From positions 248,001 through 312,000 of the IMG/VR virus record IMGVR_UViG_3300044680_000280: a stretch of 64,000 nt of DNA. The stretch is one strand, 5' to 3'. Below the pieces are notes generated by a model that was not told the origin of the DNA, did no database searches, and was given only the letters and a program-made list of their open reading frames with translations. This document shows, in pieces, positions 1 through 63,593 of the stretch (position 1 is its first letter; every line of letters begins with the position of its first letter). Position numbers and translations under genes: made by a program.

Positions 1-89
1 GTAGGTCAGCAATTTCCTGACTTGAATCCATGAGTTTAGGAATACACCGATCGACCTCCCGGTGTATGACAAACAAGAGGAGTACAATC

Positions 90-467
90 ATGGAAGAAGA
101 GCAGACGAAGACAGAGGAAACGCCGAAACCCCCGAGCTTTTACCGCAAGCACACGTTCTCGGTAAAGGGTCCGGGACGCAAGGAAACGAGCGCCTATCTT
201 ATGTCAAGGCAAATTCTCCTACCTCATCCCGTGGGAAGGCAACCGCTGACGAAGGCGCAGATCGACAAGTACTTCACGGAAACTAGAAACCGCCGATTCC
301 CAGAGCAGCGCGTGGCCAACCTCGAGTTGGTGCAACGTCAGCTCGACAAGGACACACGACGTCGTGCCCGCCTGAAGTTGGAGGGTAATGTCGTTGGAAC
401 AGTATCCGCGACGAACCTAGACGAGAAGGTCTCGGGGGAAATTCAGACGATCGCGCAAGAGTCGTGA
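90..467 (+). CDS. hypothetical protein
   Basis: ORF; ATG 90 follows GAGGAG and GGTGTA at 61-66. Confidence 0.7.
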   Translation: MEEEQTKTEETPKPPSFYRKHTFSVKGPGRKETSAYLMSRQILLPHPVGRQPLTKAQIDKYFTETRNRRFPEQRVANLELVQRQLDKDTRRRARLKLEGNVVGTVSATNLDEKVSGEIQTIAQES

Positions 468-751
468 TTTCCGAACGCCCGTTACCTGAACCTTGGTGGG
501 TCTACATTATCCAGGGGTCAGGTAACGGGCGTCTCTATACCGGCATCGCGAAGAACGTTGACAAACGACTGAAAGCCCACAACACGGGACGTGGGGCTAA
601 GTTCACTCGAATCGGCGGCCCGTGGTTCTGTATCTACAGAAAGGAGTATCCCTCACACGGGGACGCCATCCGAGAAGAGATACGAATTAAAAAGCTGACC
701 CGGGCGCAGAAGTTTCAACTGGCTCAAAGACCTCAAAGTCCTCTTCGATAG
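464..751 (+). CDS. GIY-YIG nuclease family protein (YhbQ/UPF0213-like)
   Basis: WWVYII...LYTGIAKNVDKRLKAHNTGRGAKFTR...AIREEIRIKKL. Confidence 0.9.
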   Translation: MISERPLPEPWWVYIIQGSGNGRLYTGIAKNVDKRLKAHNTGRGAKFTRIGGPWFCIYRKEYPSHGDAIREEIRIKKLTRAQKFQLAQRPQSPLR

Positions 752-2315
752 TCATTGCCATGTTGCGTTTGATCTCCGCAATCTTGTGTTTGGCAAAAAC
801 TCTCTTCGTTGCCAACTTGTGAAATTTGGGGTCTCGCTCGATTCCGATGAACTGACGGTTCTCTTCTGTAGCCGCCAGGCACGTCGTACCCGACCCGCAG
901 TAAGGATCGAGAACGACTCCTCCGACCGGCGTGACCAACTTGACGAGGTATTTCATCAGAGAAATAGGTTTTACGGTTGGGTGAAAGTTGGCTTCCTTAG
1001 GCACGTAATCGAGGTGCTCCAAGTACTTCTCTGGGATGTACTGAACGACCCACTCTTCGACCGCGCGCCCTGACTCCAAGGAGAAAGACGTGTCGAGACT
1101 GTCGTCACCCGGATTGAGGGCCAACATATTTCCTAGGGTCGCCTCCTCGATCTCAAAAAGGAGCTCTTCCGAGACGTCTTCTTTGACAATGTGCTCCTTG
1201 AGCTTGCTCTTCGGGAGACCCTCATTGCGTTCCTCCCTTGACGCTTTCGCCGCATAGAAGAACGGGGCCGCCGGCATAAACTGAACGAAGAAGCGAGCCA
1301 TACCGCCCGCATCTTTCGCAGAAGCACTTTGGGCATTCATTGTGGCGACCGGGCAACCCTCGACACATGCATAAAGGGCGACTTCTTCCTTGCCCTCGGC
1401 ATCGCCTGTCTTCATGCTCGTGTACGCATGACCCGCCCCGTGACCGAAGGGCTTCATGCCGTCATCGAATCGATTGATGATCGGGGCATCCACCTTCGCC
1501 GTCCCCGTCTGAGTGCATCCCTCCGCATGGGTGAGAACCGCGTTTGCTGGCCAACGGCCGCCCTCCTTGACGTCGTTGGCGCCCGAAAGATCGCTACTGT
1601 TCTTCCAGGAGTTGCCGAGAGACCCACCCTTTGCCTTGAGGGCGGAGACCATAGCCCTGTGCTGCTCGAGGTCTTTGGCGTTCGCGTGCTTCACCCGCGT
1701 CCCGTCGATGTTGATTCCACCCGTTCCCGTCTGGACAATCTGATCAGCAAGGGTGCCGCTGAACGGCTTCCGCATGCAAAGGATGGGCTCCCAAGCCGGT
1801 TTCAGCGCCGTACCGTACCCCTCAAACTGGTCCGCCCTGGCGAGCAGTTTGGCCTTCAGCTCCGGGTCTTCCGCAACCGCGGCCCGCTTGCGTAACTCCT
1901 TGGAAATGTTCATGGACTTGGGAAAGCCTTGCGCTTGAATCCATTGTAGGCAAGGGGATCCAAAGTACGACGAAATGGTGTCTCGGTTGTCGAACCCTGC
2001 GGCTCGGAGTCCGATGCTCATGACGTCCCAGGTTCGAGTCGAAGCGAAGCTCAAAACGTAGCCCCCTGGCTTGAGCACGCGGAGGCACTCACGCCAAACG
2101 GGCACGGAGGGGATGTCCCACTTGTAAGACATGAAGTCCCCGCCCATGTCGAGCGTCGACCCGCGAAGGTACGCTTCAATGTCCTCCTTCGTTGGCTCCC
2201 TCGTGCCCATCCCGTAGGGGGGATCCGTCACAATACTGTCGACGGAGTTGTCAGGAAGGGTCTTCAGAACTTCGAGGCAGTCACCATTAAGTATGACATT
2301 GGTGGACTCGGACAT
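687..2315 (-). CDS. DNA N4/N6 methyltransferase (beta class)
   Basis: Motif IV DPPY near N-terminus; HPTVKP and motif I DPYCGSG near C-terminus. Confidence 0.92.
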   Translation of the reverse strand: MSESTNVILNGDCLEVLKTLPDNSVDSIVTDPPYGMGTREPTKEDIEAYLRGSTLDMGGDFMSYKWDIPSVPVWRECLRVLKPGGYVLSFASTRTWDVMSIGLRAAGFDNRDTISSYFGSPCLQWIQAQGFPKSMNISKELRKRAAVAEDPELKAKLLARADQFEGYGTALKPAWEPILCMRKPFSGTLADQIVQTGTGGINIDGTRVKHANAKDLEQHRAMVSALKAKGGSLGNSWKNSSDLSGANDVKEGGRWPANAVLTHAEGCTQTGTAKVDAPIINRFDDGMKPFGHGAGHAYTSMKTGDAEGKEEVALYACVEGCPVATMNAQSASAKDAGGMARFFVQFMPAAPFFYAAKASREERNEGLPKSKLKEHIVKEDVSEELLFEIEEATLGNMLALNPGDDSLDTSFSLESGRAVEEWVVQYIPEKYLEHLDYVPKEANFHPTVKPISLMKYLVKLVTPVGGVVLDPYCGSGTTCLAATEENRQFIGIERDPKFHKLATKRVFAKHKIAEIKRNMAMTIEEDFEVFEPVETSAPGSAF

Positions 2316-2325
2316 ACCGAATCCA

Positions 2326-3159
2326 CTACACCGTCATCGTGCGCTCCTCGTGAACGAATTTCATGAGCACCGTCTTGATCTTGGGTTCGTAGATGGCTTT
2401 CCACGACTTGTAGGGCGCCTTGAGACCCTCCGCCTTGAGGTGGGGCAGCATGACGTCTTCCGTCTGCGCATGAGCCTTGAATCCGAGAATCTCAGCCGGA
2501 GTGTACCCCTCCATGAGGAGGTCGAGGTACAGGGGAGCGTCCGGATGCACGTGTTGCAGTGCCTGTCGGACCTTCGGAAGCACACTGGTCGGTAGATTGT
2601 GGTAGAAGTTTGCTTCGGACTCTGGGTCCCCCATCTGCATCGTGGGGTTTCCCTCCTCGTCGGTGTTGTCGATGGACGGACCGAAGTCATACTTCTTGCG
2701 CTTCGTCTTCTGAATGTCCGAGAGGACAACGTAGTTCAAGCTCTTCAAGAGGTACCTGAACACCTCTCCCAGCTTCGCCCCCTCCCTCAGCTCTTTCCAC
2801 CCACCTTCGACCACGAAGGCGAATAGCCAATTCGAGATAGCGACGTCGACTAACTGCTCGGAGTGGTATTTGGCGAGCAGACTCTTTCGGAGGTCCGCAG
2901 CAAAACCCCGAAGGTAATCCGCAGGAAGGAGTTTCGTCGGGTCCTTGTGCTGATCCACCGGAAATTCAAGTGCCGGCTTCCCGTGGATGTCGGGCAAGTC
3001 CTGAATCTTCTTGCGGATAAAAATGACCCCTAAAGATCGGCCGAGAGCCTGGAGTTCCACTCCTGAGAGGGACGCGATTACGTAAGCCAGTCGCATCCCG
3101 AGCGGGAGCGATGCAAAGATAGCTCGGGTTACACGTACCCCCCGACTTCGTACTTCCAT
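2326..3159 (-). CDS. divergent sigma-factor-like protein
   Basis: Region-2-like VFRYLLKSLNYVVLSDIQKTKRK; region-4-like LYLDLLMEGYTPAEI; adjacent to a second sigma-like gene. Confidence 0.45.
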   Translation of the reverse strand: MEVRSRGVRVTRAIFASLPLGMRLAYVIASLSGVELQALGRSLGVIFIRKKIQDLPDIHGKPALEFPVDQHKDPTKLLPADYLRGFAADLRKSLLAKYHSEQLVDVAISNWLFAFVVEGGWKELREGAKLGEVFRYLLKSLNYVVLSDIQKTKRKKYDFGPSIDNTDEEGNPTMQMGDPESEANFYHNLPTSVLPKVRQALQHVHPDAPLYLDLLMEGYTPAEILGFKAHAQTEDVMLPHLKAEGLKAPYKSWKAIYEPKIKTVLMKFVHEERTMTV

Positions 3160-3194: not shown

Positions 3195-4322
3195 TCAGGC
3201 CATCGACGAGACGAAGATGTTTTCCTCTGCCAATTCCACATCTTCCTCAATGGTTACCGACTCTTCCATCAGGTCGTCGGTAATGACCTGATCCTCGGCA
3301 CCCGGAGTAGGACGCATTTGAATCTGTCGACGCTCGCGGGCGATGCGGACCCAAGGACGGAGCAGACGTTGAGTGAGGCGGAGGTCATCCGGAGATAGCT
3401 CGAGCTTGCGGACAGCTTCCTCGATGTCGTACCCTTCATTGATGAACTCGAAGATCTCTTCCGCACGGGCGGCGGCGGGACTCTTGGAGATCTCCCGGAG
3501 CAGAAGGCTGAGTTCGGCACGGGCTTCTTGATTGCAGGGGGTCTTATCCGGCAGTCGGCTTTCCCAGGAGAGGGAGTCCTCGACGAGCGGGCGGAGCTCC
3601 TGGAAGGTGTCCCAAACGCGCTCCTTGTTGTGTCGCTCCTCACCTCGGCAAAAGTTCTTGAAGCGATTGTGCACCGTCTTTGAAAGGTAGTTCTGAAAAT
3701 GCCGCCGGCTCTTGGGGACGATCGTGTTGTGGTCGAGCATGACCGCGTCCTCGAAGTACTCCATCTCACCGAGTCGAATGACCGCCGCGAGATTGTAGGT
3801 AGTGTGCTTGGAGTCCGCCTTGCCCTTCAAAGGAAGGACCATCCAAGGCTCCCGGGGAACCGTCGCAACGAACGTCTTGATCGCGTCACGAAACCGTTCC
3901 CACGTGATTCCAAGGGCCTTGTGGGCTTGTTCCCCGGTGATCGTCTCCGGAACGACGACGTTGCTCTGCTCGAGAAATCGTTCGATCGCGCGGGCTTGCT
4001 TCAGTTGGAGAAAGATCTCCTGAACGATGTCACGCGTTCGGCTGTTCGCCGTGACCTTGTTGTAACGACTGATCAGGTGAACGACGAGGGCGCCGTAGAG
4101 GCGAATGAACTGGTCGTACACTTCGCGCTTGTCGAGAGACCGTATGTCGAAAATGGCCTGAATGTAGTCAGCGTAAATCGGGTCGAACGTTTCGGATTCC
4201 ACCTCGGAGCTTCGATGTCGTCGAACCTTTCGAATTCCTGTGATCTCGTCTTGGAAATCCTCCGCATCAGGTGCGTCGGGGGTGAGATTGACGACGTTCG
4301 AGGCTTGGTTTCGAATTGACAT
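3195..4322 (-). CDS. ECF-like sigma factor with insertion in region 2
   Basis: DIVQEIFLQL (2.2-like), FQNYLSKTVHNRFKNFCR (2.3/2.4-like), FEFINEGYDIEEAVRKLELS (region 4-like). Confidence 0.65.
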   Translation of the reverse strand: MSIRNQASNVVNLTPDAPDAEDFQDEITGIRKVRRHRSSEVESETFDPIYADYIQAIFDIRSLDKREVYDQFIRLYGALVVHLISRYNKVTANSRTRDIVQEIFLQLKQARAIERFLEQSNVVVPETITGEQAHKALGITWERFRDAIKTFVATVPREPWMVLPLKGKADSKHTTYNLAAVIRLGEMEYFEDAVMLDHNTIVPKSRRHFQNYLSKTVHNRFKNFCRGEERHNKERVWDTFQELRPLVEDSLSWESRLPDKTPCNQEARAELSLLLREISKSPAAARAEEIFEFINEGYDIEEAVRKLELSPDDLRLTQRLLRPWVRIARERRQIQMRPTPGAEDQVITDDLMEESVTIEEDVELAEENIFVSSMA

Positions 4323-5014: not shown

Positions 5015-5516
5015 GGGCCCTGCCTTCGGGAACCGTTGCCGTTCCATCGTGTCGTGTCGGGCCCCCTTCGGGGCCGTTATCTGTTTGTCTTCGAGGTACT
5101 GTTCTCTACGGGACTGTTTCTACGGTCGTTGTTTGAATCGTGGTTGTTTGTGTTGTTGCGGTTGCGGTTGCGGTTGTTACGATCATCATCAGTGACATCA
5201 GAACCTCACCCATCCGTTCTCTCTTATATTTGATACCATCTAACCAACTGTGATCCCTGAGGATACATTGGATCGAAGATCTCCACAGGTGGAACAATGA
5301 TGTCCCACCTCTATAAGGTCGCTACCTGGACGTTCCGCTCCTTCCCGTGAGGGAAAGAGAAGGCCAGCCTGACTTGGGGATGTGTTGCTACGAGTGAGCA
5401 TTCGCGTCTCACTGTAGGACCGTAACTCCGGTACGTCAAGCTCTTACCTTTTAGGTGAGGTGGGACATCGACAGAGAACTCTTGGAAGGGTAGCCTCTGG
5501 TGTAAGGAATCTCATC

Positions 5517-5834
5517 ATGATGACGTTACTGGAATTCTCGGATGTGAATGGGAAACCCCAGGTTAAGATCGATCTTCCGCCGCTTCTCATGGGATCGAAG
5601 GTGCGGTTGCACCTTAGTCTTCAGCGTACGAGTGGGGCTCGAAATGAGATCCTCGTCGTTGACGGACAGTTTCGAGTCGCTGCGGTCGGTGTAGATGCAG
5701 GATGTTCTCCACAGAGACAGGTGGTTTCCGTGGAATCTCTGAACGTCACCCCGACGTGGCGGTCGATCAAGAAAACAGTTGAATGGAGGCGTGCGCTTCC
5801 CCCTGTGAGGGCTCCGCGCACGATTGTTGAATGA
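5517..5834 (+). CDS. hypothetical protein
   Basis: GGTGTA 5499-5504 and AGGA before ATG 5517. Confidence 0.65.
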   Translation: MMTLLEFSDVNGKPQVKIDLPPLLMGSKVRLHLSLQRTSGARNEILVVDGQFRVAAVGVDAGCSPQRQVVSVESLNVTPTWRSIKKTVEWRRALPPVRAPRTIVE

Positions 5835-6136: not shown

Positions 6137-6749
6137 ACATTTTGAACGCCTGGGACTCTACAGGTCCCTCTGCGAGGTTTTCCTTGTACTTCCCAGTCTG
6201 TGAGTACAATTTTTCAACCTCACCCGAAATAGTGTGGAAACGAACCTGACCGATTCTCATGCCAGGGTATAGACGTACGGGGTAAGTGCAGGTAACCTCT
6301 AAAGTTAGCTGACCCGAAAACCCGGGGTCACAGAAGCCAGCGGTTTCATGGATGCTCACAAAAAGTCGCCCGATACTGCTCTTTCCGTCGAGCACGGGGA
6401 CAAACTCGTCGGTGCTGATCCGCTCCTTAGTGTGCATCAAGTAGCCGATCCCGGGTTTCAGGACCCAACCCTCGACTGGGTCGATCCTGAACCGACGGAT
6501 CTTGTTCGGCTTCCGAACGTCGAGGATGGCGGACTTAAAGCCATAGATGGGAACGAGGTTTCGACCGTCGGGGACCTCGTCAGCACCAGACGGAAGCGAG
6601 TAAGTTACAGCCTCGTACACCGCGACGTGCTCACCGAGGGTGACGTCGTAGCTCGTGGGGTTGACCTGGTCGGGGTCGAACGGGTCGATTTTGATACGAA
6701 ACTCGCTAATCGCGTTAAGAATGCCCCGATCGGAGAGAATGCCGTCCAT
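6120..6749 (-). CDS. dcd: dCTP deaminase
   Basis: QVNPTSYDVTLG, GKSSIGRL, AGFCDPGFSGQLTLE, GMRIGQ; start set at ATG 6749, 11 nt after GGTGTA. Confidence 0.92.
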   Translation of the reverse strand: MDGILSDRGILNAISEFRIKIDPFDPDQVNPTSYDVTLGEHVAVYEAVTYSLPSGADEVPDGRNLVPIYGFKSAILDVRKPNKIRRFRIDPVEGWVLKPGIGYLMHTKERISTDEFVPVLDGKSSIGRLFVSIHETAGFCDPGFSGQLTLEVTCTYPVRLYPGMRIGQVRFHTISGEVEKLYSQTGKYKENLAEGPVESQAFKMFSSQP

Positions 6750-6973
6750 GGTGTCCATACTACACCGCTCATCCCTCCCGACATGATCATATCCCACAGT
6801 ATCATGTTCGATTCCAGTGTCACCGCCCGGGTCTTTGTGAAGCGTTACTACCTCGAGCTGAGGCACCCGTGTCTGGTGGAGGACGAGGTGGTGCACATTG
6901 TGCTCCCAAAAAGTGACTTTGAGGCCGCGAGTTTACTTGCCGCCGACCTCAACGGGAGCATACTCTATGCAGA

Positions 6974-10984: not shown

Positions 10985-11238
10985 GGAGATCGCCATGAGG
11001 CCAGGAGAACCATGGCCTCATGAGTGGTCTTCTCCCTTACTAGAGCCATATCATACATAGCCTCTAAGGCGACGATTGCGGTTCCGCTGGCCAGGGCACC
11101 GTAGATACATTTGTCCAAAACATCGAGAATAGTTATCGCTTTTGGTGGAGATTCCCATTTTTCGATCAGAGGCTTTACGCTGGCATCCAATTGGGAGTCC
11201 GGAGCTCGCAGTAGCAGGGTCTTTAGTTGGTCAGACAT
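10969..11238 (-). CDS. hypothetical protein
   Basis: GGTGTA exactly 10 nt before ATG. Confidence 0.65.
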   Translation of the reverse strand: MSDQLKTLLLRAPDSQLDASVKPLIEKWESPPKAITILDVLDKCIYGALASGTAIVALEAMYDMALVREKTTHEAMVLLASWRSPQSSL

Positions 11239-11287
11239 ATGCCATTTTTACACCAACATGATTCACATGCCGGTGTATGTGCCGCGC

Positions 11288-13621
11288 ATGAACAGCTACC
11301 AGGTGAACCCAAACCTTTACCTCGTCGTGAATGAGGTAAGTAAGGCCCCAGCAACCAAGATCGTTGATGTCCCCGTCGACCATATTCTCGTGTACGACTG
11401 CTCGGGGAGTATGAGCTATGACTTACCGAAAATACGGGAGCAGGTGAAGAAGAAGCTTCCGAAGATGCTCGGGCCGAATGATCGCCTCAGCATAGTGTGG
11501 TTCTCGGGCCGCGTAGAGCACGGAATTCTCCTTGAAGCTGAACCGGTAGCGACGCTATCGGATCTCAAGACCATCGAGCAAACAATCGATCGGTGGCTTC
11601 GTCCTGTCGGGATGACGGGCTTCAAGGGGCCTCTCGAAGACGTGGTCGCGCTCGCGCAACGTTTGGAGAAGACGGGTGGTAATAGAGCACGGTCGATGAT
11701 GTTCTTTACCGACGGCTGTGACAACCAGTCCAGCCAGAACGAAGTTCTCAAAGCAGTTGAGAACGCGGGCATGCATGTACAATCGGCAACCTTCGTCGAA
11801 TATGGTTACTACGCCAACCGACCCCTGCTAGCCCAAATGGCTGAGAAGAGCGGCGGATCCCTTATCTTTGCCGAGACCTTCGACAAATACGAACCTCAGT
11901 TCGAGGCGTCCATCAAACGCAAGAGCACGAATGCCAAACGAATCGAGGTCACCCTCAAAGGTGACCCGGTCGGTGGGTTTGCCTACGCTCTCCAAGGTGG
12001 AGATCTCGTAACATTCGGTGTCGAGGGCGGAAAGATTTCCGTTCCAGAGGACCTCGGCCAATTCTACTACCTGTCTCCGTCATGCGTCGGAACTCTTGCT
12101 TCGGGTACAAGCATGAAGGGGCTCGACGCCACCCTTTCCGCTGTATACGCAGCGATCAGCCTCTTTTCCGTTCGCATGAAGCCTGACGTTGTGCTCCCCC
12201 TTCTCAAGGTGACGGGCGACGCGAGGTTCATCAAGGATTTCTCGACTTGCTTCGGCAAGCAGAAGTACAGCGCCTTCATGGACGCCACCAAGGCGGCGGC
12301 TTTCGATCGGGATCTGCGGTTGAAGGACGGGTACAACCCGAACCTCGTTCCGCCCGATGACGCGGTCACCGTTCTCGATGTACTCGAGACCCTTTATGAG
12401 GATGAGAGCGCGCGTATCCTCCTCAACGATATGACGTACACGAGCATCGGCCGGGGACGGCTCGACGCCACGGATCAGCTCACGGCGGAAGAGCAAACCC
12501 AAGTCGACACTCTCACCGAGGAGATGGGTAAGACCAAGGACGCGAAGAAGATTCGACTTCTTGCCCAGCAAATCGCCGACATCACTGACAAGCCGGAGGC
12601 CCTCAAGTTCAAACGGGAGGTACCGTCGTCGGGTCTGCCCATCAAGAACCTGACCTTCAACGAGGACCGTCCCAACGTAAGCTTCCTCGTTCAAATCCCG
12701 GGTACCATCGACCTTTCGAGTCGCATCGACAAGGCGACGATCGACTTGACGGGCGTCCCGACCATTTTCAAGTGCTTCCAGTTCCGAAACTATGCCGTCA
12801 TTAAGGATGGGCTCGTCAACATCGAGAAGCTCCCCGTCATCGTGTCCCAGAAGACCTTCGACAAGTTTTTGGCCGAGGGCGTCGTGACGAAGGAGGATGT
12901 TCTACGGCTCGAAACCGACGGGCACTCCGTCGGCTTGTGCATTAATCTCAAGTCCCTTCCCGTCATCAACCGCAAGATGGTGAAGGAGCTCAGCGCCAAG
13001 ACCTTCTTCGAGACCGCGTATGAGGTCACCAAGGCCAAGGCGGCGCAGAAGGTACTCAAGGACTATGCCAAGTCTCTCCTGCCGGAGAAGCAAAGCGTCG
13101 GCTATGCGGACAAATACGGCCAGGAGATCGCCGTGTGGCTCAAGGAGCAAGGGATCACGGACTACAACGGATTCCAGCCTCCCCATACGACGTCGGCGCC
13201 GACGACCGATGTATACACGGGTAAGGAACTGAAGGTCTCCCTCAAGGGACTCTCATCTCTGCCCAAGGTTGCCGAAGTGAAGGCGAAGATCCAAAAGGTG
13301 GGCTCCAAACTCAACGCCCCGTCCGCCCTCATGGCGGAGACGATCAAGGAAGTGGAGGCGTTCCTCTCAAGTGCCGTCTACTTGAAGGCGGCTGACCAGC
13401 CAGGGGTCCTCCAGGCGTGGCTCGACGGACAGACGAAGGCGTCGATCAGGAAGACCCGCGCGCTCATGCTCGACATGGCCAAGTTCACGTTTACGACCGT
13501 CGTCGGTCAAACCTGGTTCAAGGAGTTCTCCTCCGTGGACCAGACAGACATGACGATCACCGTGGACGGTAACGACATTCCGTGCAAGGTGGAAATGAAA
13601 GAGATTGAGATCAGGGTGTAG
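11288..13621 (+). CDS. large vWA-domain protein
   Basis: MIDAS DCSGSM and FFTDG; ATG 11288 is 10 nt after GGTGTA. Confidence 0.88.
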   Translation: MNSYQVNPNLYLVVNEVSKAPATKIVDVPVDHILVYDCSGSMSYDLPKIREQVKKKLPKMLGPNDRLSIVWFSGRVEHGILLEAEPVATLSDLKTIEQTIDRWLRPVGMTGFKGPLEDVVALAQRLEKTGGNRARSMMFFTDGCDNQSSQNEVLKAVENAGMHVQSATFVEYGYYANRPLLAQMAEKSGGSLIFAETFDKYEPQFEASIKRKSTNAKRIEVTLKGDPVGGFAYALQGGDLVTFGVEGGKISVPEDLGQFYYLSPSCVGTLASGTSMKGLDATLSAVYAAISLFSVRMKPDVVLPLLKVTGDARFIKDFSTCFGKQKYSAFMDATKAAAFDRDLRLKDGYNPNLVPPDDAVTVLDVLETLYEDESARILLNDMTYTSIGRGRLDATDQLTAEEQTQVDTLTEEMGKTKDAKKIRLLAQQIADITDKPEALKFKREVPSSGLPIKNLTFNEDRPNVSFLVQIPGTIDLSSRIDKATIDLTGVPTIFKCFQFRNYAVIKDGLVNIEKLPVIVSQKTFDKFLAEGVVTKEDVLRLETDGHSVGLCINLKSLPVINRKMVKELSAKTFFETAYEVTKAKAAQKVLKDYAKSLLPEKQSVGYADKYGQEIAVWLKEQGITDYNGFQPPHTTSAPTTDVYTGKELKVSLKGLSSLPKVAEVKAKIQKVGSKLNAPSALMAETIKEVEAFLSSAVYLKAADQPGVLQAWLDGQTKASIRKTRALMLDMAKFTFTTVVGQTWFKEFSSVDQTDMTITVDGNDIPCKVEMKEIEIRV

Positions 13622-14047: not shown

Positions 14048-14237
14048 GGGTTACCTCTCCTAAGGCGCTCATGCCACGAGCCCGGCTTCGCTGTCAAGAA
14101 CTCCGGCTCCTGGCTTCTGCACTTTCTATGCCCGCTCAACCATTCGGACCTGAACCGATTTCGTTCAAAAACTACCCCGGGTTGGTGTAAGAAGAACGTG
14201 GGGAGCAAGCTTTCCTGTAACCCCGGGAGATTTCAAC

Positions 14238-14897
14238 GTGGCTGAAAACAAAAAGGGTCTGTGGTCCTCCTTGAAGAGCCTTGCCATCGAGGACGTGCCC
14301 GACCCGTCGGCAAAGTCCGCGGTTCCTCTGATTCCAACGACACGTCCAAACCCCGGCGCCGTACCTCCCCCGTGGGTCGCTCCCCCGAGGATTGAAGTTT
14401 CGGTCGATCCGGCAACCTTATCGAAGATCGAGGGCAAACTCCAGGCCTCGACCCCTCCTGTTTATGCGGCGTTTATGGATCAGTTTCAGGCGCTCGAAGC
14501 CGTGATCCCCGACGAGGCAACGCGGTTCAAAGCGGCTCTTGTCGCCAGTCGTTCGTCCATCGAACAGATCTCGGGATCCATCGACCAGCTCCTTGTTGTC
14601 CTGGCGTCTCTGCTTGACGAGTTCAATCGGAAGTTCGAGGACAACCAGAGCAAAGCGGAAACTACAGCCAAGCAGCAGATGGAGGCTGACACGAAGCTCA
14701 TCGCCACTTGCGAGGAGCAACTCAAAGCCATCCAAGCTCAGATTGCTACCCTTCGCACGAAGGTCGACAGCGAACAAGCACAGGTTCAGGCGGAATCCGC
14801 TCGTCGAGAGGGCGTCCGCCAGTCGTTCAAAGCAGCATACGACCAGGTTTTCAATCGCCTCACCGCCCAAAAACAACGCATCTCACAGAGGGTCTAA
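14238..14897 (+). CDS. coiled-coil protein, first gene of ABC/OmpA operon
   Basis: Long helical C-terminal half; tight operon spacing. Confidence 0.75.
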   Translation: MAENKKGLWSSLKSLAIEDVPDPSAKSAVPLIPTTRPNPGAVPPPWVAPPRIEVSVDPATLSKIEGKLQASTPPVYAAFMDQFQALEAVIPDEATRFKAALVASRSSIEQISGSIDQLLVVLASLLDEFNRKFEDNQSKAETTAKQQMEADTKLIATCEEQLKAIQAQIATLRTKVDSEQAQVQAESARREGVRQSFKAAYDQVFNRLTAQKQRISQRV

Positions 14898-19680: not shown

Positions 19681-19962
19681 ACCGGGCCACGTAGGAAGTC
19701 CGTTCACCATATCGAATGGTGGGCAGCCGCATCTGTACCAATGAAGGAGACCCTTCTTCCCCAGGAGTAGAACAGGAACTTGCCAGGCTTCAACGCTCCA
19801 GCAGTCCTCGTACTCGGCGTCAGGGAATTGAGCTCGGACGTCTTTCAGTACCTCTTCCTTGGTCGGCGCGACGAACAATTTCCCGTTTCCAACCACCACC
19901 CATCCAACGGTGCTGCTGTTGTACGGGTCCCCATTGCTGATCGAATGACACGTAAACTCCAT
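19663..19962 (-). CDS. hypothetical protein
   Basis: GGTGTA 10 nt before ATG. Confidence 0.6.
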   Translation of the reverse strand: MEFTCHSISNGDPYNSSTVGWVVVGNGKLFVAPTKEEVLKDVRAQFPDAEYEDCWSVEAWQVPVLLLGKKGLLHWYRCGCPPFDMVNGLPTWPGLEGLK

Positions 19963-46868: not shown

Positions 46869-46911
46869 GATCCCTAAGGATACACCGAAACCCCGGCGTT
46901 ACACTGACCCG

Positions 46912-48159: not shown

Positions 48160-48187
48160 GAAGTTCGCCTCGGTGTATCAGTAGGGC

Positions 48188-48831: not shown

Positions 48832-49067
48832 CCCCTCTCCCACTTCCCCTCATCATTCCACCTTCCAGACCCAAGAAGGAACGACGGCGACCCAGGCTCC
48901 CCCTCAAATGGGGCCCTCGAGTTCCCCTCGGGTCGGGACAACCCGTGCTTTCTCAGCCGTCGACCCCGACGGGCATTCTCAATGTCCCACATCACAAGAG
49001 CCACAAAGACCGCCGCGCCCCACAGCACCATCGAAACCGCGCCCCGTACCCGTTTCCAAATGCCCAT
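48828..49067 (-). CDS. small membrane protein
   Basis: GGTGTA 9 nt before ATG 49067; TM segment. Confidence 0.55.
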   Translation of the reverse strand: MGIWKRVRGAVSMVLWGAAVFVALVMWDIENARRGRRLRKHGLSRPEGNSRAPFEGEPGSPSFLLGSGRWNDEGKWERG

Positions 49068-49113
49068 GGGAAAGGTTACACCGAAGACGAACAGCGGGCG
49101 GGGGCTCGATGAT

Positions 49114-51365: not shown

Positions 51366-51430
51366 CCTCGAGCCCGAAGGAGCTCCGTTTCCCCGGTGTA
51401 GGCTAAGTCCCCTCGAGCCCGAAGGAGCTC
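51366..51430 (+). repeat. 20-bp direct repeat CCTCGAGCCCGAAGGAGCTC x2 flanking a GGTGTA motif
   Basis: Copies at 51366 and 51411; GGTGTA at 51395-51400. Confidence 0.9.
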
Positions 51431-53068: not shown

Positions 53069-53764
53069 GTCCCCAGCCTGGGGACAACCTGGGTGTTGCC
53101 TCAAACCCGCCCGTTGCACGACATGTACAACACCACGAATTCATGTCATACATTTTGACACACCTGAACAACGGTTCCCCTCGAGCGATAGGCACTGAAC
53201 AGAGACCCTCGTTCAGTAGCTGAACATAAATACAGCACTGTTCGCACGGTTGGTTCAGTGCCACCTGTCCGCGAAGCGGGACAGGTGCGAGCTGGAGGCG
53301 AGCTCCCACATATCTCGAGGGTAATGCCGTATTCGCTTGACTTTGTCATGACCGAGTTTCTTAAGCGTGTTGAGGCACATCCCCAAAAGAAATCAAGCTC
53401 TTCCGCCGAAGGACGGACCGATTTATTCCTCCGGGATTCGAAATCCCAACTCATCCGTGGGCTTGACCTCTACCATGAGTGGAGGGAACCTACCTTCGCC
53501 CTGCTTCGCGGGCCCGTGGTAGACGGTTAGATGGTTCGATGGACCGACGGGGTGATGGGTAGATGGATCGACGGGGTGACCGGAGAGCGTACCGCGAGAT
53601 TCCCCTAGCCGCACCGGTTCGAATGGTTAAGCTTGCCAGTAAGGGTATCAAGCTTCCTTTGGGGAGCCCCTAGAGGGGTCGGCCTTGCTCTTGAGGTTGG
53701 CCCTTCGCCATTTCCAGCCCTGCTTCGCGGGCATGTAGAATGGTGGGTGGTGTATACTGGAGTC

Positions 53765-54001
53765 ATGTTCAATCCGTCCTCACCTGAGGTCAAGGTGTGC
53801 GGGGAGGCGGGTCAGCGACTGTATGACAAACTTGAGGCGGAGGGGGTCTCTCTGATGGCGGTCGGGGTGGGCGTCAGTTGGAACGGACAGCAGCCTGCGA
53901 TCCACCTGATGCTTGTCCGGAGCACGGACAGACCGATTCCTGAGACCTTTGAGGGGTACGAAGTCCACTGTCGCGTCACGGGGCGGATTGTGCCGCTGTG
54001 A
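53765..54001 (+). CDS. small alpha/beta protein (homolog of 57340-57576)
   Basis: GGTGTA 10 nt upstream; AVGVG...IP..FEGY.V...VTGRIVPL. Confidence 0.7.
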   Translation: MFNPSSPEVKVCGEAGQRLYDKLEAEGVSLMAVGVGVSWNGQQPAIHLMLVRSTDRPIPETFEGYEVHCRVTGRIVPL

Positions 54002-54073
54002 CGGTACGGGCTGAAACATTTACGTTTGTAAAAAAGCCCGAACTCTTAAAACCCCCATGGTGTACTAAAAGAG

Positions 54074-54598
54074 GTGGAGCCTTTACACGGTGGACTCCTA
54101 GATGAGAGGAATTTTAGAGACCGCGGCTCGGTCCCCTTCGAACTCGACGAGCCGGTACAGGTTGAGGCTGTGGGAGGGGAGAGTTGGGAACTACCTACGG
54201 GAAAGTACTACATTAAAATGGTTAGATATTACCTCAGGATTGAAACCGTCGTCCTAGAGGCAGCACCTCTCTCTGTAGCGGAGCTGGAAATCGTTATCGC
54301 TAAAAACTTCGAGGAACGATGCTCGCTCACACGTAGAGTAGACGGTCGTATTTTAAGCCGTACATGTGAGTTCAAACACCCTACACAATTGGGAGAATTC
54401 CTTTACGGCCCTAAATGCATCCAACCTGGGTGTAATGGGGTCATCTCCTCATTTACCTTCGAAGCGGAAGAACAGATCTCCCTGTGTCCCAAACATACAA
54501 CTCCTAAAGGTTCATTCCACTTAGGAGCTGACGATGACGATGACGATGACGATCAAAAACCTCCACGTTACGACCGCATGAGAAGGCAATTCCAATGA
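54074..54598 (+). CDS. hypothetical protein with Cys/His motif and poly-Asp
   Basis: GGTGTA 9 nt before GTG; CIQPGC...CPKH. Confidence 0.6.
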   Translation: MEPLHGGLLDERNFRDRGSVPFELDEPVQVEAVGGESWELPTGKYYIKMVRYYLRIETVVLEAAPLSVAELEIVIAKNFEERCSLTRRVDGRILSRTCEFKHPTQLGEFLYGPKCIQPGCNGVISSFTFEAEEQISLCPKHTTPKGSFHLGADDDDDDDDQKPPRYDRMRRQFQ

Positions 54599-56001: not shown

Positions 56002-56031
56002 CCATTTAAACCCTCGGTGTAATGCCTCTCC

Positions 56032-56493
56032 ATGGATCTCGACACTCTTCTAGCTCACCTTGAGAGCACGGCGGGCGTTAGCGGGACCAGCCTACACCCG
56101 GACGACTGGCAATGGTCCGAGTTGTTCAGGGATTACCTGGGGAAGCACTCACGGGTCTTTCGGGGATGTCCGTGCATCGGTACGGAGGCGACGACAGGAC
56201 AGTGTCACCGTAAGAGCGCCGAGTGGGCTCGAGAGCACGGCGGAACTTTTTGGTCCGGCTACGCCCTTTCCGAGGGGGAGTGGGTAACGCACTCGTGGGC
56301 GGTGCACCGAGGTTCTCTTGTGGTGGAATGCACTCCGATTGCACGGACGGTGTACGTTGGTGTGAGACGACTATTGACAAGGCGGGAGCTCATCGGGAGT
56401 CGTCTCAATGTCGGTCCCTCCGTGTTGGAGACGGTGGAAGAGCGACGCCTGCGGAAGCGGTTAGCTGAACCGTCCTTTACCTCATGTCCTTAG
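56032..56493 (+). CDS. hypothetical protein with possible Cys-His catalytic motif
   Basis: GQCHRKSA...GYALS.GEWVTHSW; GGTGTA 10 nt upstream. Confidence 0.6.
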   Translation: MDLDTLLAHLESTAGVSGTSLHPDDWQWSELFRDYLGKHSRVFRGCPCIGTEATTGQCHRKSAEWAREHGGTFWSGYALSEGEWVTHSWAVHRGSLVVECTPIARTVYVGVRRLLTRRELIGSRLNVGPSVLETVEERRLRKRLAEPSFTSCP

Positions 56494-56805: not shown

Positions 56806-57078
56806 TCATGAGTCATGAGTGACCTCCTCAGTCAAAAGGTGTTCCCAATGGTTCATGCGGGGTTCTGTAGGTTGTGAGCTGGAGGGGGCATCAGGTACGT
56901 AAACATCGATCTGGCAGCGGCTAGAATCAGCCTCATCTTGAAGCAAGAGGACGACTCGTCCTTGTACTTCCCACTCCCACCCCGACCCGAATTCGGCGGA
57001 TGCCACCCCGCGGATCGTAACCCAGGAGCCGATGTTCGGGCGGACACCGTCAGGGATGGGCATCGTGAATCTAGGCAT
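56806..57078 (-). CDS. small beta-rich protein with WEHLL tag
   Basis: GGTGTA 12 nt before ATG 57078; ends PRMNHWEHLLTEEVTHDS. Confidence 0.7.
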   Translation of the reverse strand: MPRFTMPIPDGVRPNIGSWVTIRGVASAEFGSGWEWEVQGRVVLLLQDEADSSRCQIDVYVPDAPSSSQPTEPRMNHWEHLLTEEVTHDS

Positions 57079-57142
57079 CGTTCTTACCCCTACACCGGGT
57101 CCTTGGAGGGCGGTTATGACGGAACTGACTTGACCCATCGGC

Positions 57143-58055: not shown

Positions 58056-58117
58056 CCGTTTGCAAAGTGACGGAACACGGGCTCGATCCAAGGTCGTGCC
58101 GGTGTAAGAGATTGAGG

Positions 58118-58555
58118 ATGAGAAAGTCGTATGAGCAACGGCGGGCGGCGAGAGCGGACAGATTCGTCGCGTCTCTTACGGACGAGAGCGAGTTTTTCGG
58201 CCTAATCGGCGCGGGTTGTCCCGACTCCTTCTACCGGATCTACGTTCGACTCACGAAGGAGTCTCGAACGTGGTGGCGCTTCGAGGTTGGAGCGGGTCCG
58301 TCGAGCATCAATCCGATCAAGCGTCAGGGCAACATGAACGTAGCGGATCGGGCGGTAGCGATGTGGGGACCTATTCCGTTCCTCGCCGATTACACCTACG
58401 ATCCCGAAAAGCTTTCAATTGCCAAGTTCAACTCGAGGAGCCTAGTCATACAGCCGAGTTTGAACCCGATGTTGCGCCGACAGAAGAAAAACGTTCAATC
58501 TACGAACATATACTCGATCCAGGCCAGGGCCTCCTCAACGGTGGAACTGGCGTGA
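58118..58555 (+). CDS. hypothetical protein
   Basis: GGTGTA 11 nt before ATG 58118. Confidence 0.6.
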   Translation: MRKSYEQRRAARADRFVASLTDESEFFGLIGAGCPDSFYRIYVRLTKESRTWWRFEVGAGPSSINPIKRQGNMNVADRAVAMWGPIPFLADYTYDPEKLSIAKFNSRSLVIQPSLNPMLRRQKKNVQSTNIYSIQARASSTVELA

Positions 58556-61929: not shown

Positions 61930-62189
61930 CACCGCTTTCTCCAATTCGGAGGGGGGTGATTCTGGGGAGCCGAAAAAACGCACTCCTGGAGCACCTTCTC
62001 TTCTTTGTCGTCACGCTTCCGCCTCTCGGCGAGCATCGTGTCGGCCATCTCGGCCGCATCGGCGGCAAGATCCTCCCTTTCATCTTCGCCTACCGGGGTC
62101 ATGGAGCTGCTCGAGAAGGCGCCCCTGATGACGGCGGCAGCGAAGCGATCCCAGGCCTTGCGCTCCTCTTTCGTTCGAATTCGATCCAT
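61929..62189 (-). CDS. small hypothetical phage protein
   Basis: WDRFAAAVI...AADAAEMADTMLAERRKR; GGTGTA 11 nt upstream. Confidence 0.7.
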   Translation of the reverse strand: MDRIRTKEERKAWDRFAAAVIRGAFSSSSMTPVGEDEREDLAADAAEMADTMLAERRKRDDKEEKVLQECVFSAPQNHPPPNWRKR

Positions 62190-62289
62190 GTTCCTCTACA
62201 TACACCGACGCGGAGCGGGAGCCGAGCCCGAAAGGGGCTGGATAGTTGACCGATTTGCATGGCTTCGAGCCGGTGTACTTATATTCTAC

Positions 62290-62511
62290 ATGAGCACAGA
62301 GGACATCGTAAGGCTTACGCTCTGCATCATCCTATTCACGTTAATATGTCTCGCCTTGTCGGGCGTCTTGGACGAAGGGTCCGACAAGTCGAAGTCCGTG
62401 GCGGAGAAGGGCGACGCTCTGTTCACTGAAGCCTGCGTTAACCAAGAGAACAGCGGGTCACCCCCTGAAAGCGGTGTATGGATAAAAAAGAACACCCATG
62501 CCCACCGTTGA
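62290..62511 (+). CDS. small membrane protein
   Basis: TM helix; GGTGTA 12 nt upstream. Confidence 0.55.
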   Translation: MSTEDIVRLTLCIILFTLICLALSGVLDEGSDKSKSVAEKGDALFTEACVNQENSGSPPESGVWIKKNTHAHR

Positions 62512-63289
62512 CGACGCTGCTTCGCCCCGACCTCAATTTGGCGTCATCTTTGACGTTGACGGGGTCCTTCTGGACTCCCTTCCCGCGCACCTGGACGTTT
62601 GTCGAAAAAGGGGTCTCGAGTATGGGCTCAACCTCTCGATCCCGGACCCCGCGGCTTTCCGTTCGATGGTCCGTCAGGGCGTGAAGATCAGCCCCATGGT
62701 CGACTTCTTCCGAGCGGTCGGCTTTCCGAGTGACCTAGCCGAACGTGCGGATTACGACTACCAACACAACTTCAGCCGTGAGTACACGTCTCCCCTCTTC
62801 CCCGGTGTTTCCGAGATGCTGGCACGGTTCAAGACGGCCAACTGGGAGATGGGAATCGTGACGTCGAATACACGGGGAAATATTCGAGAATCTCTTGGAA
62901 GTCTCAAGACGTACTTTCGGCACGAAAGCATATTCACCCGAGAGGACGGGATCTCCAAAGCGGTCGCCATCGAGTGCCTTACCGACCTGTTCTATCTCAA
63001 ACCCCACCAGGTCGTCTATATAGGAGACCAACCCGCCGATGCCAAGGCCGCTCTCGACGCGGGCGTCCGTTTCCTGGGCGTCACCTACGGTTGGGGTATC
63101 GAACGGGGAGACAACGGCATGGAGACGGTCGGTCACCCCAAGGAAATAGCCGATTATCTTCTCGCCGGTTTTACGGGCGGTACAACCCCGACGGAATCTT
63201 CGCCTTTGAGCGAGGATGCCCACATTTCATCAACACGTACATCGGCAAAACCTGCTCCTGCGACGACGCGCCAGTCCAGGAGGTCTTGA
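62498..63289 (+). CDS. HAD-superfamily phosphatase (Gph-like)
   Basis: IFDVDGVLLDS, LFPGV, IVTSN, YIGDQPAD..AA. Confidence 0.9.
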   Translation: MPTVDDAASPRPQFGVIFDVDGVLLDSLPAHLDVCRKRGLEYGLNLSIPDPAAFRSMVRQGVKISPMVDFFRAVGFPSDLAERADYDYQHNFSREYTSPLFPGVSEMLARFKTANWEMGIVTSNTRGNIRESLGSLKTYFRHESIFTREDGISKAVAIECLTDLFYLKPHQVVYIGDQPADAKAALDAGVRFLGVTYGWGIERGDNGMETVGHPKEIADYLLAGFTGGTTPTESSPLSEDAHISSTRTSAKPAPATTRQSRRS

Positions 63290-63593
63290 AGCATGGGGCA
63301 GACAAAGCACGGCTCTCTAGGTTCAGTAAGCAACCTACACCTAACCACTTTCTTTTGTACGGCGTTGGGAAAGTGGCTTGCTCGCTGACCGTGCTCGGTT
63401 AGACTCTCCGTTGTCGAGGCGGTGAGTCGGTCCTGAGCACGGGCCGGTCTTTACAGCGTCGCAAGCCGGGCGAAACGACCGGCTAGAGCCCTGATTCGGT
63501 GTTCCACCACCGGGTCGGGGCTCGTGACTTTTGTGGGTTTGGATTGCGGCTAGGACTGTGCCTTTCGTCGGACCCGCGGTGTATTAAAAAGGA

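What the first reader, a model, noticed from the sequence alone, without database searches (positions are those of the whole stretch)
61..63583. Window-wide GGTGTA-N(8-12)-start motif: a phage-specific promoter implying near-leaderless mRNAs
GGTGTA (usually CCGGTGTA or TCGGTGTA) lies exactly 10 nt before the start codon at 11238(-), 11288, 19962(-), 19999, 26284, 32129(-), 33160(-), 34306(-), 39443, 41483(-), 48188, 53765, 56032 and 63594. It lies 8-12 nt before 5517, 6749(-), 22261(-), 30463, 36104(-), 46868(-), 49067(-), 54074, 57078(-), 58118, 62189(-) and 62290. Most of these have no Shine-Dalgarno sequence, and I found no shared -35 element. The fixed spacing suggests a -10-only promoter whose start site is at or just before the ATG, comparable in logic to T4 late promoters read by a phage sigma. 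It also corrects several starts in the ORF track and predicts non-coding transcripts at 22418, 30332 and 51411.
Basis: partly seen in the sequence, partly recalled or inferred. Interest (0 to 1): 0.7.

Follow-up and report, generated by a model that had tools for sequence, protein, structure and literature searches.

The report
Huge-phage promoter making leaderless mRNAs
A 407-kb phage from peat marks about a third of its genes with the short word (C/T)GGTGTA placed 10-11 bases before the start codon, which is best read as a phage-specific, -10-only promoter that produces mRNAs with no leader, probably read by a divergent phage-encoded sigma factor found in the same window.

Summary
All 26 coordinates check out. 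GGTGTA is the most over-represented hexamer in the 406,734-bp phage genome. About 130 copies lie 9-12 nt before an ATG, against roughly 1.5 per distance bin for control hexamers.

The promoter and leaderless reading is well supported by sequence logic, but no TSS was mapped.
- Motif-linked starts lack Shine-Dalgarno sequences, are 92% ATG and have a pyrimidine at -1. Other genes carry a normal SD.
- When the motif lies 22-60 nt upstream, in this phage or before the same gene in relatives, an SD appears in the leader. The motif therefore acts independently of the start codon.
- A tRNA-like gene and a highly structured RNA begin at the same distance from the motif.
- The geometry, TA-N10/11-ATG, matches the Deinococcus leaderless -10.
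- No -35 element exists, sigma-70 consensus promoters are not enriched, and candidate host-lineage genomes lack the arrangement.

The window encodes a divergent sigma-70-family protein (3195-4322, minus strand). Its family co-occurs with the motif in every adequately sampled relative and has no homolog in deposited phages. That this protein reads the motif is inference.

Verdict: a new variant of a known kind, namely a phage sigma-type promoter class combined with leaderless expression.

The parts
3195..4322 (-). Gene for a divergent sigma-70-family protein (375 aa), the candidate reader of the motif. It has its own SD (GGAGAA) and no GGTGTA upstream.
   Evidence: Pfam Sigma70_r2 gives 19.7 bits for this protein, below the cut-off of 24. 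Of 60 family members, 23 match r2 (best E 1e-8) and a few match r4 or ECF. AF2 model pLDDT 82.5. VIA-align top hits are almost all sigma domain 2, with Z up to 8.0. Upstream sequence read.
2326..3159 (-). Conserved 277-aa partner gene between the sigma-like gene and the methylase; function unknown.
   Evidence: The order sigma-like, then a ~280-aa protein, then an N6/N4 methylase is kept in L119, L121, L122, L125 and one further contig. No Pfam or PHROG hit.
2313..2332 (-). Motif plus 11 nt plus ATG of the DNA methylase gene (687-2315).
   Evidence: The orthologous methylase genes in L119, L121 and L122 keep the motif at d=11-13 with unrelated spacer sequence.
5499..5519 (+). Motif, N12, ATG 5517
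6747..6766 (-). Motif, N11, ATG 6749 (dCTP deaminase-like)
11236..11290 (.). Back-to-back divergent pair: TACACC-N17-GGTGTA. It drives 11238(-) and 11288(+), both at d=10.
   Evidence: N-termini of homologs in L001-L004 support the start at 11288.
19960..20001 (.). Back-to-back divergent pair with 4 bp between the two motifs. It drives 19962(-) and 19999(+, NT5C nucleotidase), both at d=10.
22259..22278 (-). Motif, N11, ATG 22261 (HNH endonuclease)
22307..22436 (-). Motif (22436-22431), 12 nt, then a tRNA-like gene at 22418-22307. The gene has a perfect acceptor stem and T arm and a 34-nt insert.
   Evidence: ARAGORN with introns allowed. Sequence. Not found by default ARAGORN or by Rfam.
26268..26286 (+). 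Motif, N10, ATG 26284
30316..30445 (+). Motif, N10, then a 114-nt structured non-coding RNA candidate (30332-30445) that ends at the next motif.
   Evidence: Fold -45.9 kcal/mol, z = -5.87, 0 of 200 shuffles as stable. Here the motif reads GGTG-TATACT, a full -10 hexamer.
30446..30465 (+). Motif, N11, ATG 30463 (dCMP deaminase)
32127..32145 (-). Motif, N10, ATG 32129
33158..33176 (-). Motif, N10, GTG 33160
34304..34322 (-). Motif, N10, ATG 34306
36102..36118 (-). Motif, N8, GTG 36104
37399..37419 (-). Motif, N12, ATG 37401. A GC-rich hairpin lies directly upstream.
39427..39445 (+). Motif, N10, ATG 39443
41481..41499 (-). Motif, N10, ATG 41483
46866..46886 (-). Motif, N12, ATG 46868
48172..48190 (+). 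Motif, N10, ATG 48188
49065..49082 (-). Motif, N9, ATG 49067
53749..53767 (+). Motif, N10, ATG 53765
54059..54076 (+). Motif, N9, GTG 54074
56016..56034 (+). Motif, N10, ATG 56032
57076..57096 (-). Motif, N12, ATG 57078
58101..58120 (+). Motif, N11, ATG 58118
62187..62206 (-). Motif, N11, ATG 62189
62272..62292 (+). Motif, N12, ATG 62290
63578..63596 (+). Motif, N10, ATG 63594
14184..14240 (+). Leadered version: motif, a 48-nt leader containing GGGAG, then GTG 14238.
28985..29033 (-). Leadered version: motif, a 40-nt leader containing GGGAG, then ATG 28987.
51395..51430 (+). Motif followed at once by a GC hairpin, with a near-copy of that hairpin just upstream. What it transcribes is unresolved.

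Best explanation
(C/T)GGTGTA is the single recognition element of a phage-specific promoter class. Its TA corresponds to positions -12/-11 of a bacterial -10 element, and GGTG occupies -16 to -13. There is no -35 element, and a positioned A/T tract near -40 to -47 occurs in a minority of sites. Host core RNA polymerase, carrying a specificity factor that is not the host housekeeping sigma, opens DNA at the TA and starts 10-11 nt downstream. In about 120-150 genes that position is the A of the ATG, so the mRNA is leaderless (or has a 0-2 nt leader) and is translated without a Shine-Dalgarno sequence. In a smaller set the same promoter sits 22-60 nt upstream and the leader carries an ordinary SD. 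It also drives at least one tRNA-like gene and probably a small structured RNA. The most likely reader is the divergent sigma-70-family protein encoded at 3195-4322(-). This protein has a sigma-2 domain interrupted by an excisionase/winged-helix-like insert and a C-terminal helical HTH-like domain. What is shown: the motif, spacing, SD exclusivity and conservation, and the sigma-like nature of the protein. What is inferred: the TSS position, and the protein-to-motif assignment.
For: Statistics. SD exclusivity: among 119 motif-linked starts GGAG occurs 4 times and never at the canonical position, while the 347 other genes show a clear GGAG/GAGG/AGGA peak ending at -7 to -10. Motif-linked starts are 92% ATG, and position -1 is C or T in 83% against 55% elsewhere, the usual Y(-1)R(+1) preference at a TSS. 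Distance classes: 115 sites at d=8-13 (10% with an SD core), only 4 at d=14-21, and 14 at d=22-60 (64% with an SD core, never starting closer than about 12-13 nt to the motif). This brackets the TSS at roughly +8 to +13. Operon heads: 41% of motif genes have a divergent upstream neighbour against 18% of others, and 13% have an intergenic gap <=10 nt against 37%. 182 of 327 copies lie in the ~15% of the genome that is intergenic. Non-coding targets: the tRNA-like gene starts 12 nt after a motif; a structured RNA starts 10 nt after one; CGGTGTA lies 45 nt before the mature tmRNA 5' end. Relatives: the ortholog of 11288-13621 in three other huge-phage contigs has CGGTGTA 26-33 nt upstream, followed by AGGAGG or AAGGA. 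The composite pattern YGGTGTA-N10-ATG occurs 28 times against 2 in the control in a 312-kb relative. In contigs L119, L121 and L122 it coincides with independently called gene starts, and the methylase ortholog keeps it in four phages. Geometry: the Deinococcus leaderless -10 (TANNNT ending 6-7 bp before the ORF, i.e. TA-N10/11-ATG) matches exactly (PMC12340547). At 30316 the motif reads GGTG-TATACT. A distant relative has TATACT-N7-ATG before its methylase. Not a host-type signal: sigma-70 consensus promoters are not enriched (4 against 5.9 expected), and five Polyangiaceae-like genomes of 3.5-9 Mb hold the composite pattern near control level: three equal their control and two are about 3-fold above it, all at ~2-5 per Mb. 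No phage RNA polymerase was detected. Sigma candidate. It co-occurs with the motif in G000, G001, G004, L119, L121 and L122.
Against: No TSS was mapped; the only RNA run holds five short contigs, none reaching a predicted start. The T at -7, the most conserved base of sigma-70-type -10 elements besides A-11, is not conserved. The TG of the motif sits one base closer to the TA than the classical extended -10 TGn. The sigma-like protein itself scores below Pfam's cut-off, and the structural Z-scores (<=8) are in the range the tool calls middling. A 13.9-kb contig with a distant member of the same protein family shows no clear GGTGTA arrangement. Host identity rests on a single auxiliary gene, so the host-genome control may have used the wrong lineage. 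Gene calls came from a rough home-made caller.
Confidence: 0.75

Rival explanations
1. The promoter is real, but it is read by a host factor rather than by the sigma-like protein at 3195-4322. The factor could be an alternative or ECF sigma of the host, or the host holoenzyme remodelled by a small phage protein as in Thermus phage P23-45 (gp39) or T4 (AsiA).
For: Myxobacterial-type hosts (lead) carry very many alternative sigmas (own knowledge). P23-45 switches host RNAP to -10-only promoters with a non-sigma protein (PMC4124052). The phage also encodes other proteins that carry only a sigma region 4. A distant family member occurs without a clear motif.
Against: The hexamer is kept unchanged in phages whose proteins are only 30-55% identical and whose GC ranges from 55 to 65%, and each of these phages also carries the sigma-like gene in conserved synteny. 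The composite pattern is near control level in the candidate host-lineage genomes (three equal to control, two about 3-fold above it). That test only covers the leaderless arrangement.
Confidence: 0.2
2. The motif is an RNA-level signal: a non-canonical ribosome-binding or translational-enhancer sequence, a binding site for a phage translational regulator, or a processing site lying in a longer 5' leader.
For: It has a fixed distance to the start codon, and GGUG can pair with the CACC of the 16S 3' end (own knowledge of the anti-SD sequence). The motif is strictly sense-oriented.
Against: GGUG would sit 12-13 nt from the AUG, whereas pairing with CACC predicts about 3-7 nt. The phage's other genes use ordinary GGAG-type SDs, so the ribosome is canonical. 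In relatives and in 14 sites of this genome the motif lies 22-60 nt upstream together with a separate SD. The same spacing precedes a tRNA-like gene and a structured RNA. It is enriched at divergent operon heads with only 4-20 bp between the two copies.
Confidence: 0.04
3. The motif is an operator or 'stoperator'-like site for a phage repressor or DNA-binding protein scattered through the genome, as in mycobacteriophage L5, and not itself the promoter.
For: It is a short asymmetric site, oriented with transcription, mostly intergenic, with tens to hundreds of copies. The record is labelled 'provirus' by IMG/VR.
Against: An operator does not explain the 10-11 nt spacing to ATG, the lack of SD at exactly those genes, the trough at d=14-21, or the absence of any other promoter signal.
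Confidence: 0.03

Closest known systems
Leaderless genes with an ORF-adjacent -10 element in Deinococcus-Thermus and Actinobacteria (TANNNT 6-7 bp before the ORF; PMC12340547, PMC3160421)
   Same: Identical geometry (TA-N10/11-ATG). No SD at those genes, while other genes use GGAG. About one third of genes are affected. The arrangement can be used to correct annotated starts.
   Different: There the element is the housekeeping TANNNT with an invariant final T. Here the conserved block is GGTG+TA with no conserved T at -7. It belongs to a phage and is at control level in candidate host-lineage genomes.
T4 late promoters read by gp55 with gp33 and the gp45 clamp (PMC2988020, PMC7892883)
   Same: A single short -10-region element and no -35. 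It is read by a very divergent phage sigma-family protein on host core RNAP. The gp55-containing complex 7d7d_F is among the structural matches of the window's protein (Z 6.3).
   Different: The sequence differs (TATAAATA, own knowledge). T4 late mRNAs have leaders and encode structural proteins, whereas here the targets are mostly metabolic and small unknown genes and are leaderless. The protein here is twice the size of gp55, with an inserted domain and a C-terminal domain. Clamp or co-activator dependence is unknown.
Extended -10 (TGnTATAAT) promoters used by Thermus phage P23-45 and T4 middle genes after sigma-4 is displaced (PMC4124052)
   Same: Independence from -35, extra specificity bases just upstream of the -10 hexamer, and use as a phage-specific class.
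   Different: Those are read by the host primary sigma with a full TATAAT-like hexamer. Here TG is out of register by one base and the downstream half of the hexamer is free.
AR9 late promoters, AACA-N6-T(A/G)+1, read by a phage multisubunit RNAP (PMC5312081)
   Same: A very short conserved word at a fixed distance from the start site in a giant phage, with about a hundred copies.
   Different: AR9 has its own RNAP and UTRs of 26-491 nt. No phage RNAP was found here, and transcripts are predicted to be leaderless.

Membership tests
Leaderless-mRNA genes with ORF-adjacent -10 (Deinococcus/Actinobacteria type) | The promoter -10 element ends 6-7 nt before the start codon (TA-N10/11-start). | tested here: met
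   d=10 in 61 sites and d=11 in 48 sites genome-wide, against about 1.5 per bin in controls. Reference geometry from PMC12340547.
Leaderless-mRNA genes with ORF-adjacent -10 (Deinococcus/Actinobacteria type) | No Shine-Dalgarno at these genes, while other genes of the genome have one. | tested here: met
   An SD core is present in 10% of d=8-13 sites, 64% of d=22-60 sites and 39% of other genes. The positional GGAG peak appears only in non-motif genes.
Leaderless-mRNA genes with ORF-adjacent -10 (Deinococcus/Actinobacteria type) | The mapped 5' end of the mRNA coincides with the start codon. | not testable with these tools
   The only RNA run (X4) gives five short contigs, none at a predicted start.
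Sigma-70-type -10 element (TANNNT) | Conserved T at -12, A at -11 and T at -7. | tested here: not met
   TA is invariant by construction. The position equivalent to -7 has T in only about 23% of sites, with a weak T (53%) at -6 in the d=10 class.
Extended -10 promoter | TG at -15/-14, one base upstream of the hexamer (TGnTAnnnT). | tested here: not met
   In GGTGTA the TG directly abuts the TA (-14/-13), so the register is off by one (sequence).
Canonical -35/-10 sigma-70 promoter | A TTGACA-like element 16-18 bp upstream of the -10. | tested here: not met
   No enriched k-mer other than the inverted motif and A/T tracts. Consensus scan gives 4 found against 5.9 expected. Divergent pairs lie only 4-20 bp apart.
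T4-type late transcription (gp55/gp33/gp45) | A TATAAATA element, a gp55-like minimal sigma, and dependence on a co-activator and the sliding clamp. | tested here: not met
   The sequence differs. The candidate protein is 375 aa with extra domains. Co-activator and clamp dependence were not tested.
Sigma-70 protein family (for the protein at 3195-4322) | A region 2 (core-binding and -10-recognition helices) recognisable by profile and fold. | tested here: met
   The protein itself scores 19.7 bits against a cut-off of 24. 23 of 60 family members match Sigma70_r2 (best 1e-8), and some match r4, r4_2 or ECF. Of the 24 best structural matches, 22 are sigma factors or sigma fragments, mostly their domain 2, with Z 5.6-8.0 and aligned ranges running from about residues 41-66 to 226-245 of the model. 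Sequence search of PDB and Foldseek E-values were not significant.
Shine-Dalgarno-type ribosome binding site | Complementarity to the 16S 3' end at an aligned spacing of about 5-9 nt. | tested here: not met
   Only GGUG could pair (with CACC), and it lies 12-13 nt from the AUG. In leadered cases a separate SD is present.
Stoperator/operator arrays of temperate phages | Repressor-bound sites without a fixed relation to start codons. | tested here: inconclusive
   The fixed spacing and SD exclusivity argue against it. No binding data exist.

The most novel reading that the evidence does not exclude
A previously undescribed sigma family defines a clade of huge soil and peat phages. The family has a sigma-2 domain split by an excisionase/winged-helix-like insert, about 195 cluster representatives in metagenomes, and no member in 50,697 deposited phage genomes. 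In this reading the inserted domain reads the duplex GGTG while region 2 captures only T-12/A-11. That would be a new mode of -10-only recognition, letting the phage run a third of its genes as leaderless mRNAs independent of host promoter and SD rules.
Probability: 0.3. Interest if true: 0.75.

Novelty: new variant of a known kind. Interest (0 to 1): 0.6.

Why it matters
This gives a directly usable rule for annotating a whole clade of uncultured huge phages. The rule fixes true start codons, delimits transcription units and flags small non-coding RNA genes. It would be the first large-scale case of leaderless expression driven by a phage-specific promoter rather than a host housekeeping one. 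It pairs a simple 7-bp DNA word with a concrete candidate sigma of unusual architecture, so one in vitro transcription experiment can test it. It also implies that the unknown host, possibly a Polyangiaceae-type myxobacterium, translates leaderless mRNAs efficiently.

Tried and rejected
- RNA evidence: one peat metatranscriptome (X4) holds the phage, but only as five contigs of 141-276 nt across 12 kb. No ends fall at predicted starts and DNA carry-over cannot be excluded.
- Phage RNA polymerases: Pfam Rpb2_6, Rpb1_2 and T7-type RNAP gave nothing in the genome. The T7-type control rang nowhere, so that negative is weak.
- Sigma70_r2 six-frame search of the genome: no hit. The sigma-like protein emerged only through a weak single-protein hit and a family-wide scan.
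- First AF2 model from 4 sequences: pLDDT 58, no useful matches.
- Foldseek on the good model: sigma factors dominate the list, but E > 0.1.
- Profile search of PDB sequences: nothing.
- tRNA genes of the 218-246 kb array do not carry the motif, so they belong to another promoter class.
- Rfam found no family for the tRNA-like gene or the structured RNA.
- Neither RNA has a homolog in the fetched relatives.
- No second over-represented intergenic word was found that could define the promoter class of the structural block.
- In the distant relative L125 no alternative motif could be established.
- Megablast against deposited phages: no match.
- No literature hit for the motif as a promoter.

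Full report
**Context.** The window is bases 248,001-312,000 of a single 406,734-bp IMG/VR virus record. CheckV estimates it as 85% complete, and its GC content is 55%. DNA runs from peat metagenomes hold it. The record carries 38 tRNA genes and a tmRNA gene. A protein look-up shows that the same gene also lies on a 463,523-bp contig. Most proteins are orphans. It is therefore a huge phage.

**The observation.**
- GGTGTA occurs 64 times in the window against 14.7 expected. Genome-wide it occurs 327 times against 112 and is the most enriched hexamer.
- The preceding base is C or T, so the core is YGGTGTA.
The window has 30 such starts in all.
- Genome-wide, the distance from the motif to an ATG opening an ORF of at least 50 codons peaks at 10 nt (61 sites) and 11 nt (48 sites), with shoulders at 9 and 12. 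Permuted control hexamers give about 1.5 per bin.
- 182 of the 327 copies lie in the ~15% of the genome that my rough gene calls leave intergenic.
- The motif-linked starts cluster in 240-407 kb and 0-50 kb. They are rare in the long co-directional blocks at 58-214 kb, which include tail-fibre-like genes.

**Promoter or translation signal?** Six independent lines point to a DNA-level promoter whose start site is at the ATG.
1. SD exclusivity. The 347 genes without the motif show a normal SD peak (GGAG, GAGG or AGGA ending 7-10 nt before the start). The 119 motif-linked starts have essentially none.
2. Start-site features. Motif-linked starts are 92% ATG, and the base before them is a pyrimidine in 83% against 55% elsewhere. 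Both are expected if the A is the first transcribed base.
3. Distance classes. There are 115 sites at 8-13 nt (10% with an SD core), only 4 at 14-21 nt, and 14 at 22-60 nt (64% with an SD core). In that last class the SD never begins closer than about 12-13 nt to the motif. This is the pattern expected if transcription begins about 10-11 nt after the motif, because leaders of 3-10 nt are useless for either mode of initiation.
4. Operon position. Motif genes are over-represented at the heads of transcription units: 41% have a divergent upstream neighbour against 18% of others. Many divergent pairs have the two motifs back to back with only 4-20 bp between them, leaving no room for -35 elements.
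5. Non-coding genes at the same spacing. A tRNA-like gene at 22418-22307 has a perfect acceptor stem and T arm plus a 34-nt insert, and it begins 12 nt after a motif. A 114-nt RNA with an exceptionally stable fold (z = -5.9) begins 10 nt after another motif and ends at the next one. The tmRNA gene has CGGTGTA 45 nt before its mature 5' end.
6. Relatives. Four IMG/VR contigs encode orthologs (52-55% identity) of the 777-aa protein at 11288-13621. In three of them CGGTGTA is kept but lies 26-33 nt upstream, followed by AGGAGG or AAGGA. The motif therefore works without a fixed relation to the start codon.

**Spread among related phages.** In the 312-kb relative, YGGTGTA-N10-ATG occurs 28 times against 2 for the reversed control. 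Three further contigs have GGTGTA-N9-13-ATG at starts called independently by the collection's own gene caller. The methylase ortholog keeps the motif in four phages while the spacer sequence differs.

**Geometry.** If the TA of the motif is taken as -12/-11 of a -10 element, +1 falls on the A of the ATG for d=10. This is the same arrangement described for leaderless genes of Deinococcus, where TANNNT ends 6-7 bp before the ORF (PMC12340547). At 30316 the motif reads GGTG-TATACT. A distant relative has TATACT-N7-ATG before its methylase. The element is nevertheless not a standard -10. The T at -7 is not conserved, and the TG is one base out of register with the extended -10. A GGUG-to-anti-SD pairing would need a spacing about 5-9 nt shorter than observed, so an SD-like role is rejected.

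**Who reads it.**
- No phage RNA polymerase was detected, and sigma-70 consensus promoters are not enriched.
- The NadA-like auxiliary gene is closest (65-73% identity) to Polyangiaceae/Myxococcota genomes. Five such genomes carry the composite pattern near control level: three equal their control and two are about 3-fold above it, all at ~2-5 per Mb. The phage has about 150 per Mb.
- The window itself encodes a 375-aa protein (3195-4322, minus strand) with a sub-threshold Sigma70_r2 match.
- An exhaustive profile search found 195 cluster representatives of its family. Of 60 aligned members, 23 match Sigma70_r2 (best 1e-8) and a few match region 4 or ECF models.
- With that alignment AlphaFold gives pLDDT 82.5. 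An all-against-PDB structural alignment returns almost only sigma factors or sigma fragments (mostly domain 2) among its best 24 matches. These include sigma-B at Z 8.0, pro-sigma-K, RpoE, sigma-28, AlgU, SigE, sigma-W and the T4 gp55 complex at Z 6.3.
- Residues ~124-192 form an insert resembling excisionase or winged-helix domains. The Z-scores are in the range the tool itself calls middling. The case therefore rests on the consistency of the hits together with the Pfam result.
- The gene has its own SD and no GGTGTA upstream.
- It sits in a conserved triad: sigma-like gene, ~280-aa unknown, DNA methylase.
- It has homologs in the two larger relatives that also have the motif, and none in 50,697 deposited phage genomes.
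- That this protein reads the motif is an inference from co-occurrence. Other proteins containing only a sigma region 4 exist in the genome, and a host alternative sigma cannot be excluded.

**What the motif drives.** Identified targets are a dCTP-deaminase-like protein, dCMP deaminase, a 5'-deoxynucleotidase, an HNH endonuclease, a DNA methylase, a helicase, an ATPase, and many small unknown genes. This looks like an early or middle, DNA-metabolism class rather than a late structural class.

**Limits.**
- No transcription start was mapped. The single metatranscriptome with this phage is too thin.
- The host assignment rests on one gene.
- The third predicted non-coding start (51411) is unresolved.

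**Verdict.** It combines two known principles, a phage-specific sigma-type promoter class and ORF-adjacent -10 elements giving leaderless mRNAs. The sequence, the scale and the candidate factor appear not to have been described.

Noticed in passing
window 22307-22418 (-): A tRNA-like gene with a perfect 7-bp acceptor stem and a TTCGATT T-loop, but an enlarged central region. ARAGORN calls it tRNA-Thr(AGT) with a 34-nt intron. The putative anticodon hairpin CCGGA-GTAGTTAG-TCCGG has an 8-nt loop. Default ARAGORN and Rfam both miss it.
   Followed up: partly
window 30332-30445 (+): A 114-nt intergenic RNA candidate with a very stable fold (-45.9 kcal/mol, z -5.9), bracketed by two motifs. No Rfam family, apart from a weak tRNA-Sec-like hit on the opposite strand (E 0.02), and no homolog in the fetched relatives.
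   Followed up: partly
window 687-4322 (-): A conserved gene triad: sigma-like protein, ~280-aa unknown protein, N6/N4 DNA methylase. It is kept even in distant family members. The methylase is motif-driven and the sigma-like gene is not. The middle protein could be a co-factor of the sigma.
   Followed up: partly
genome 164,951-246,034 (just upstream of the window): 38 tRNA genes and a tmRNA gene (tag ANDNGIPDLAIAA), nearly all on the minus strand. The tRNA genes lack the GGTGTA motif, so another promoter class must serve them.
   Followed up: partly
genome 398,133-399,077 (L015:5134-6078): A quinolinate synthase (NadA) auxiliary gene, motif-driven (d=11). It is 65-73% identical to Polyangiaceae/Myxococcota MAG proteins, which gives a host lead.
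   Followed up: partly
24-31 nt upstream of the motif, genome-wide: A positioned run of T or A (TTTT or AAAA) in roughly a quarter of motif sites, at about -40 to -47 from the predicted start. It may be UP-element-like, or a remnant of upstream terminators.
   Followed up: partly
window 51360-51440 (+): Two near-identical GC hairpins (CTCGAGCCCGAAGGAGCTC...) flank the motif at 51395. An 87%-identical 39-nt copy of a stretch further downstream (about window 51590-51627) lies at genome 313,293-313,331.
   Followed up: no
genome-wide: Besides GGTGTA, GTAC-containing words (GTACTT, GGGTAC, GTACGG, TTGTAC) and GAGCTC are over-represented 2-2.5-fold. The same GTAC words top the list in the distant relative L125. 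No explanation was sought.
   Followed up: no
L125 (contig with a distant sigma-family member): Several genes there have TTGAC-N17-CTTAnn or TATACT placed 6-7 nt before the ATG. That phage therefore also seems to use leaderless starts, but with ordinary -35/-10-like elements.
   Followed up: partly
window 11288-13621 (+): A 777-aa VWA-domain protein (phrog_2426) has ~35% identical homologs in about 500 Ackermannviridae-like phages of enterobacteria. It is one of the few links between this phage and cultured phages.
   Followed up: no
window 27962-28212, 31378-31518, 54332-54850, 56794-57013: Five short contigs, each identical to the phage, in a peat metatranscriptome (run X4). The phage may be transcriptionally active in situ, but DNA carry-over is not excluded.
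   Followed up: partly
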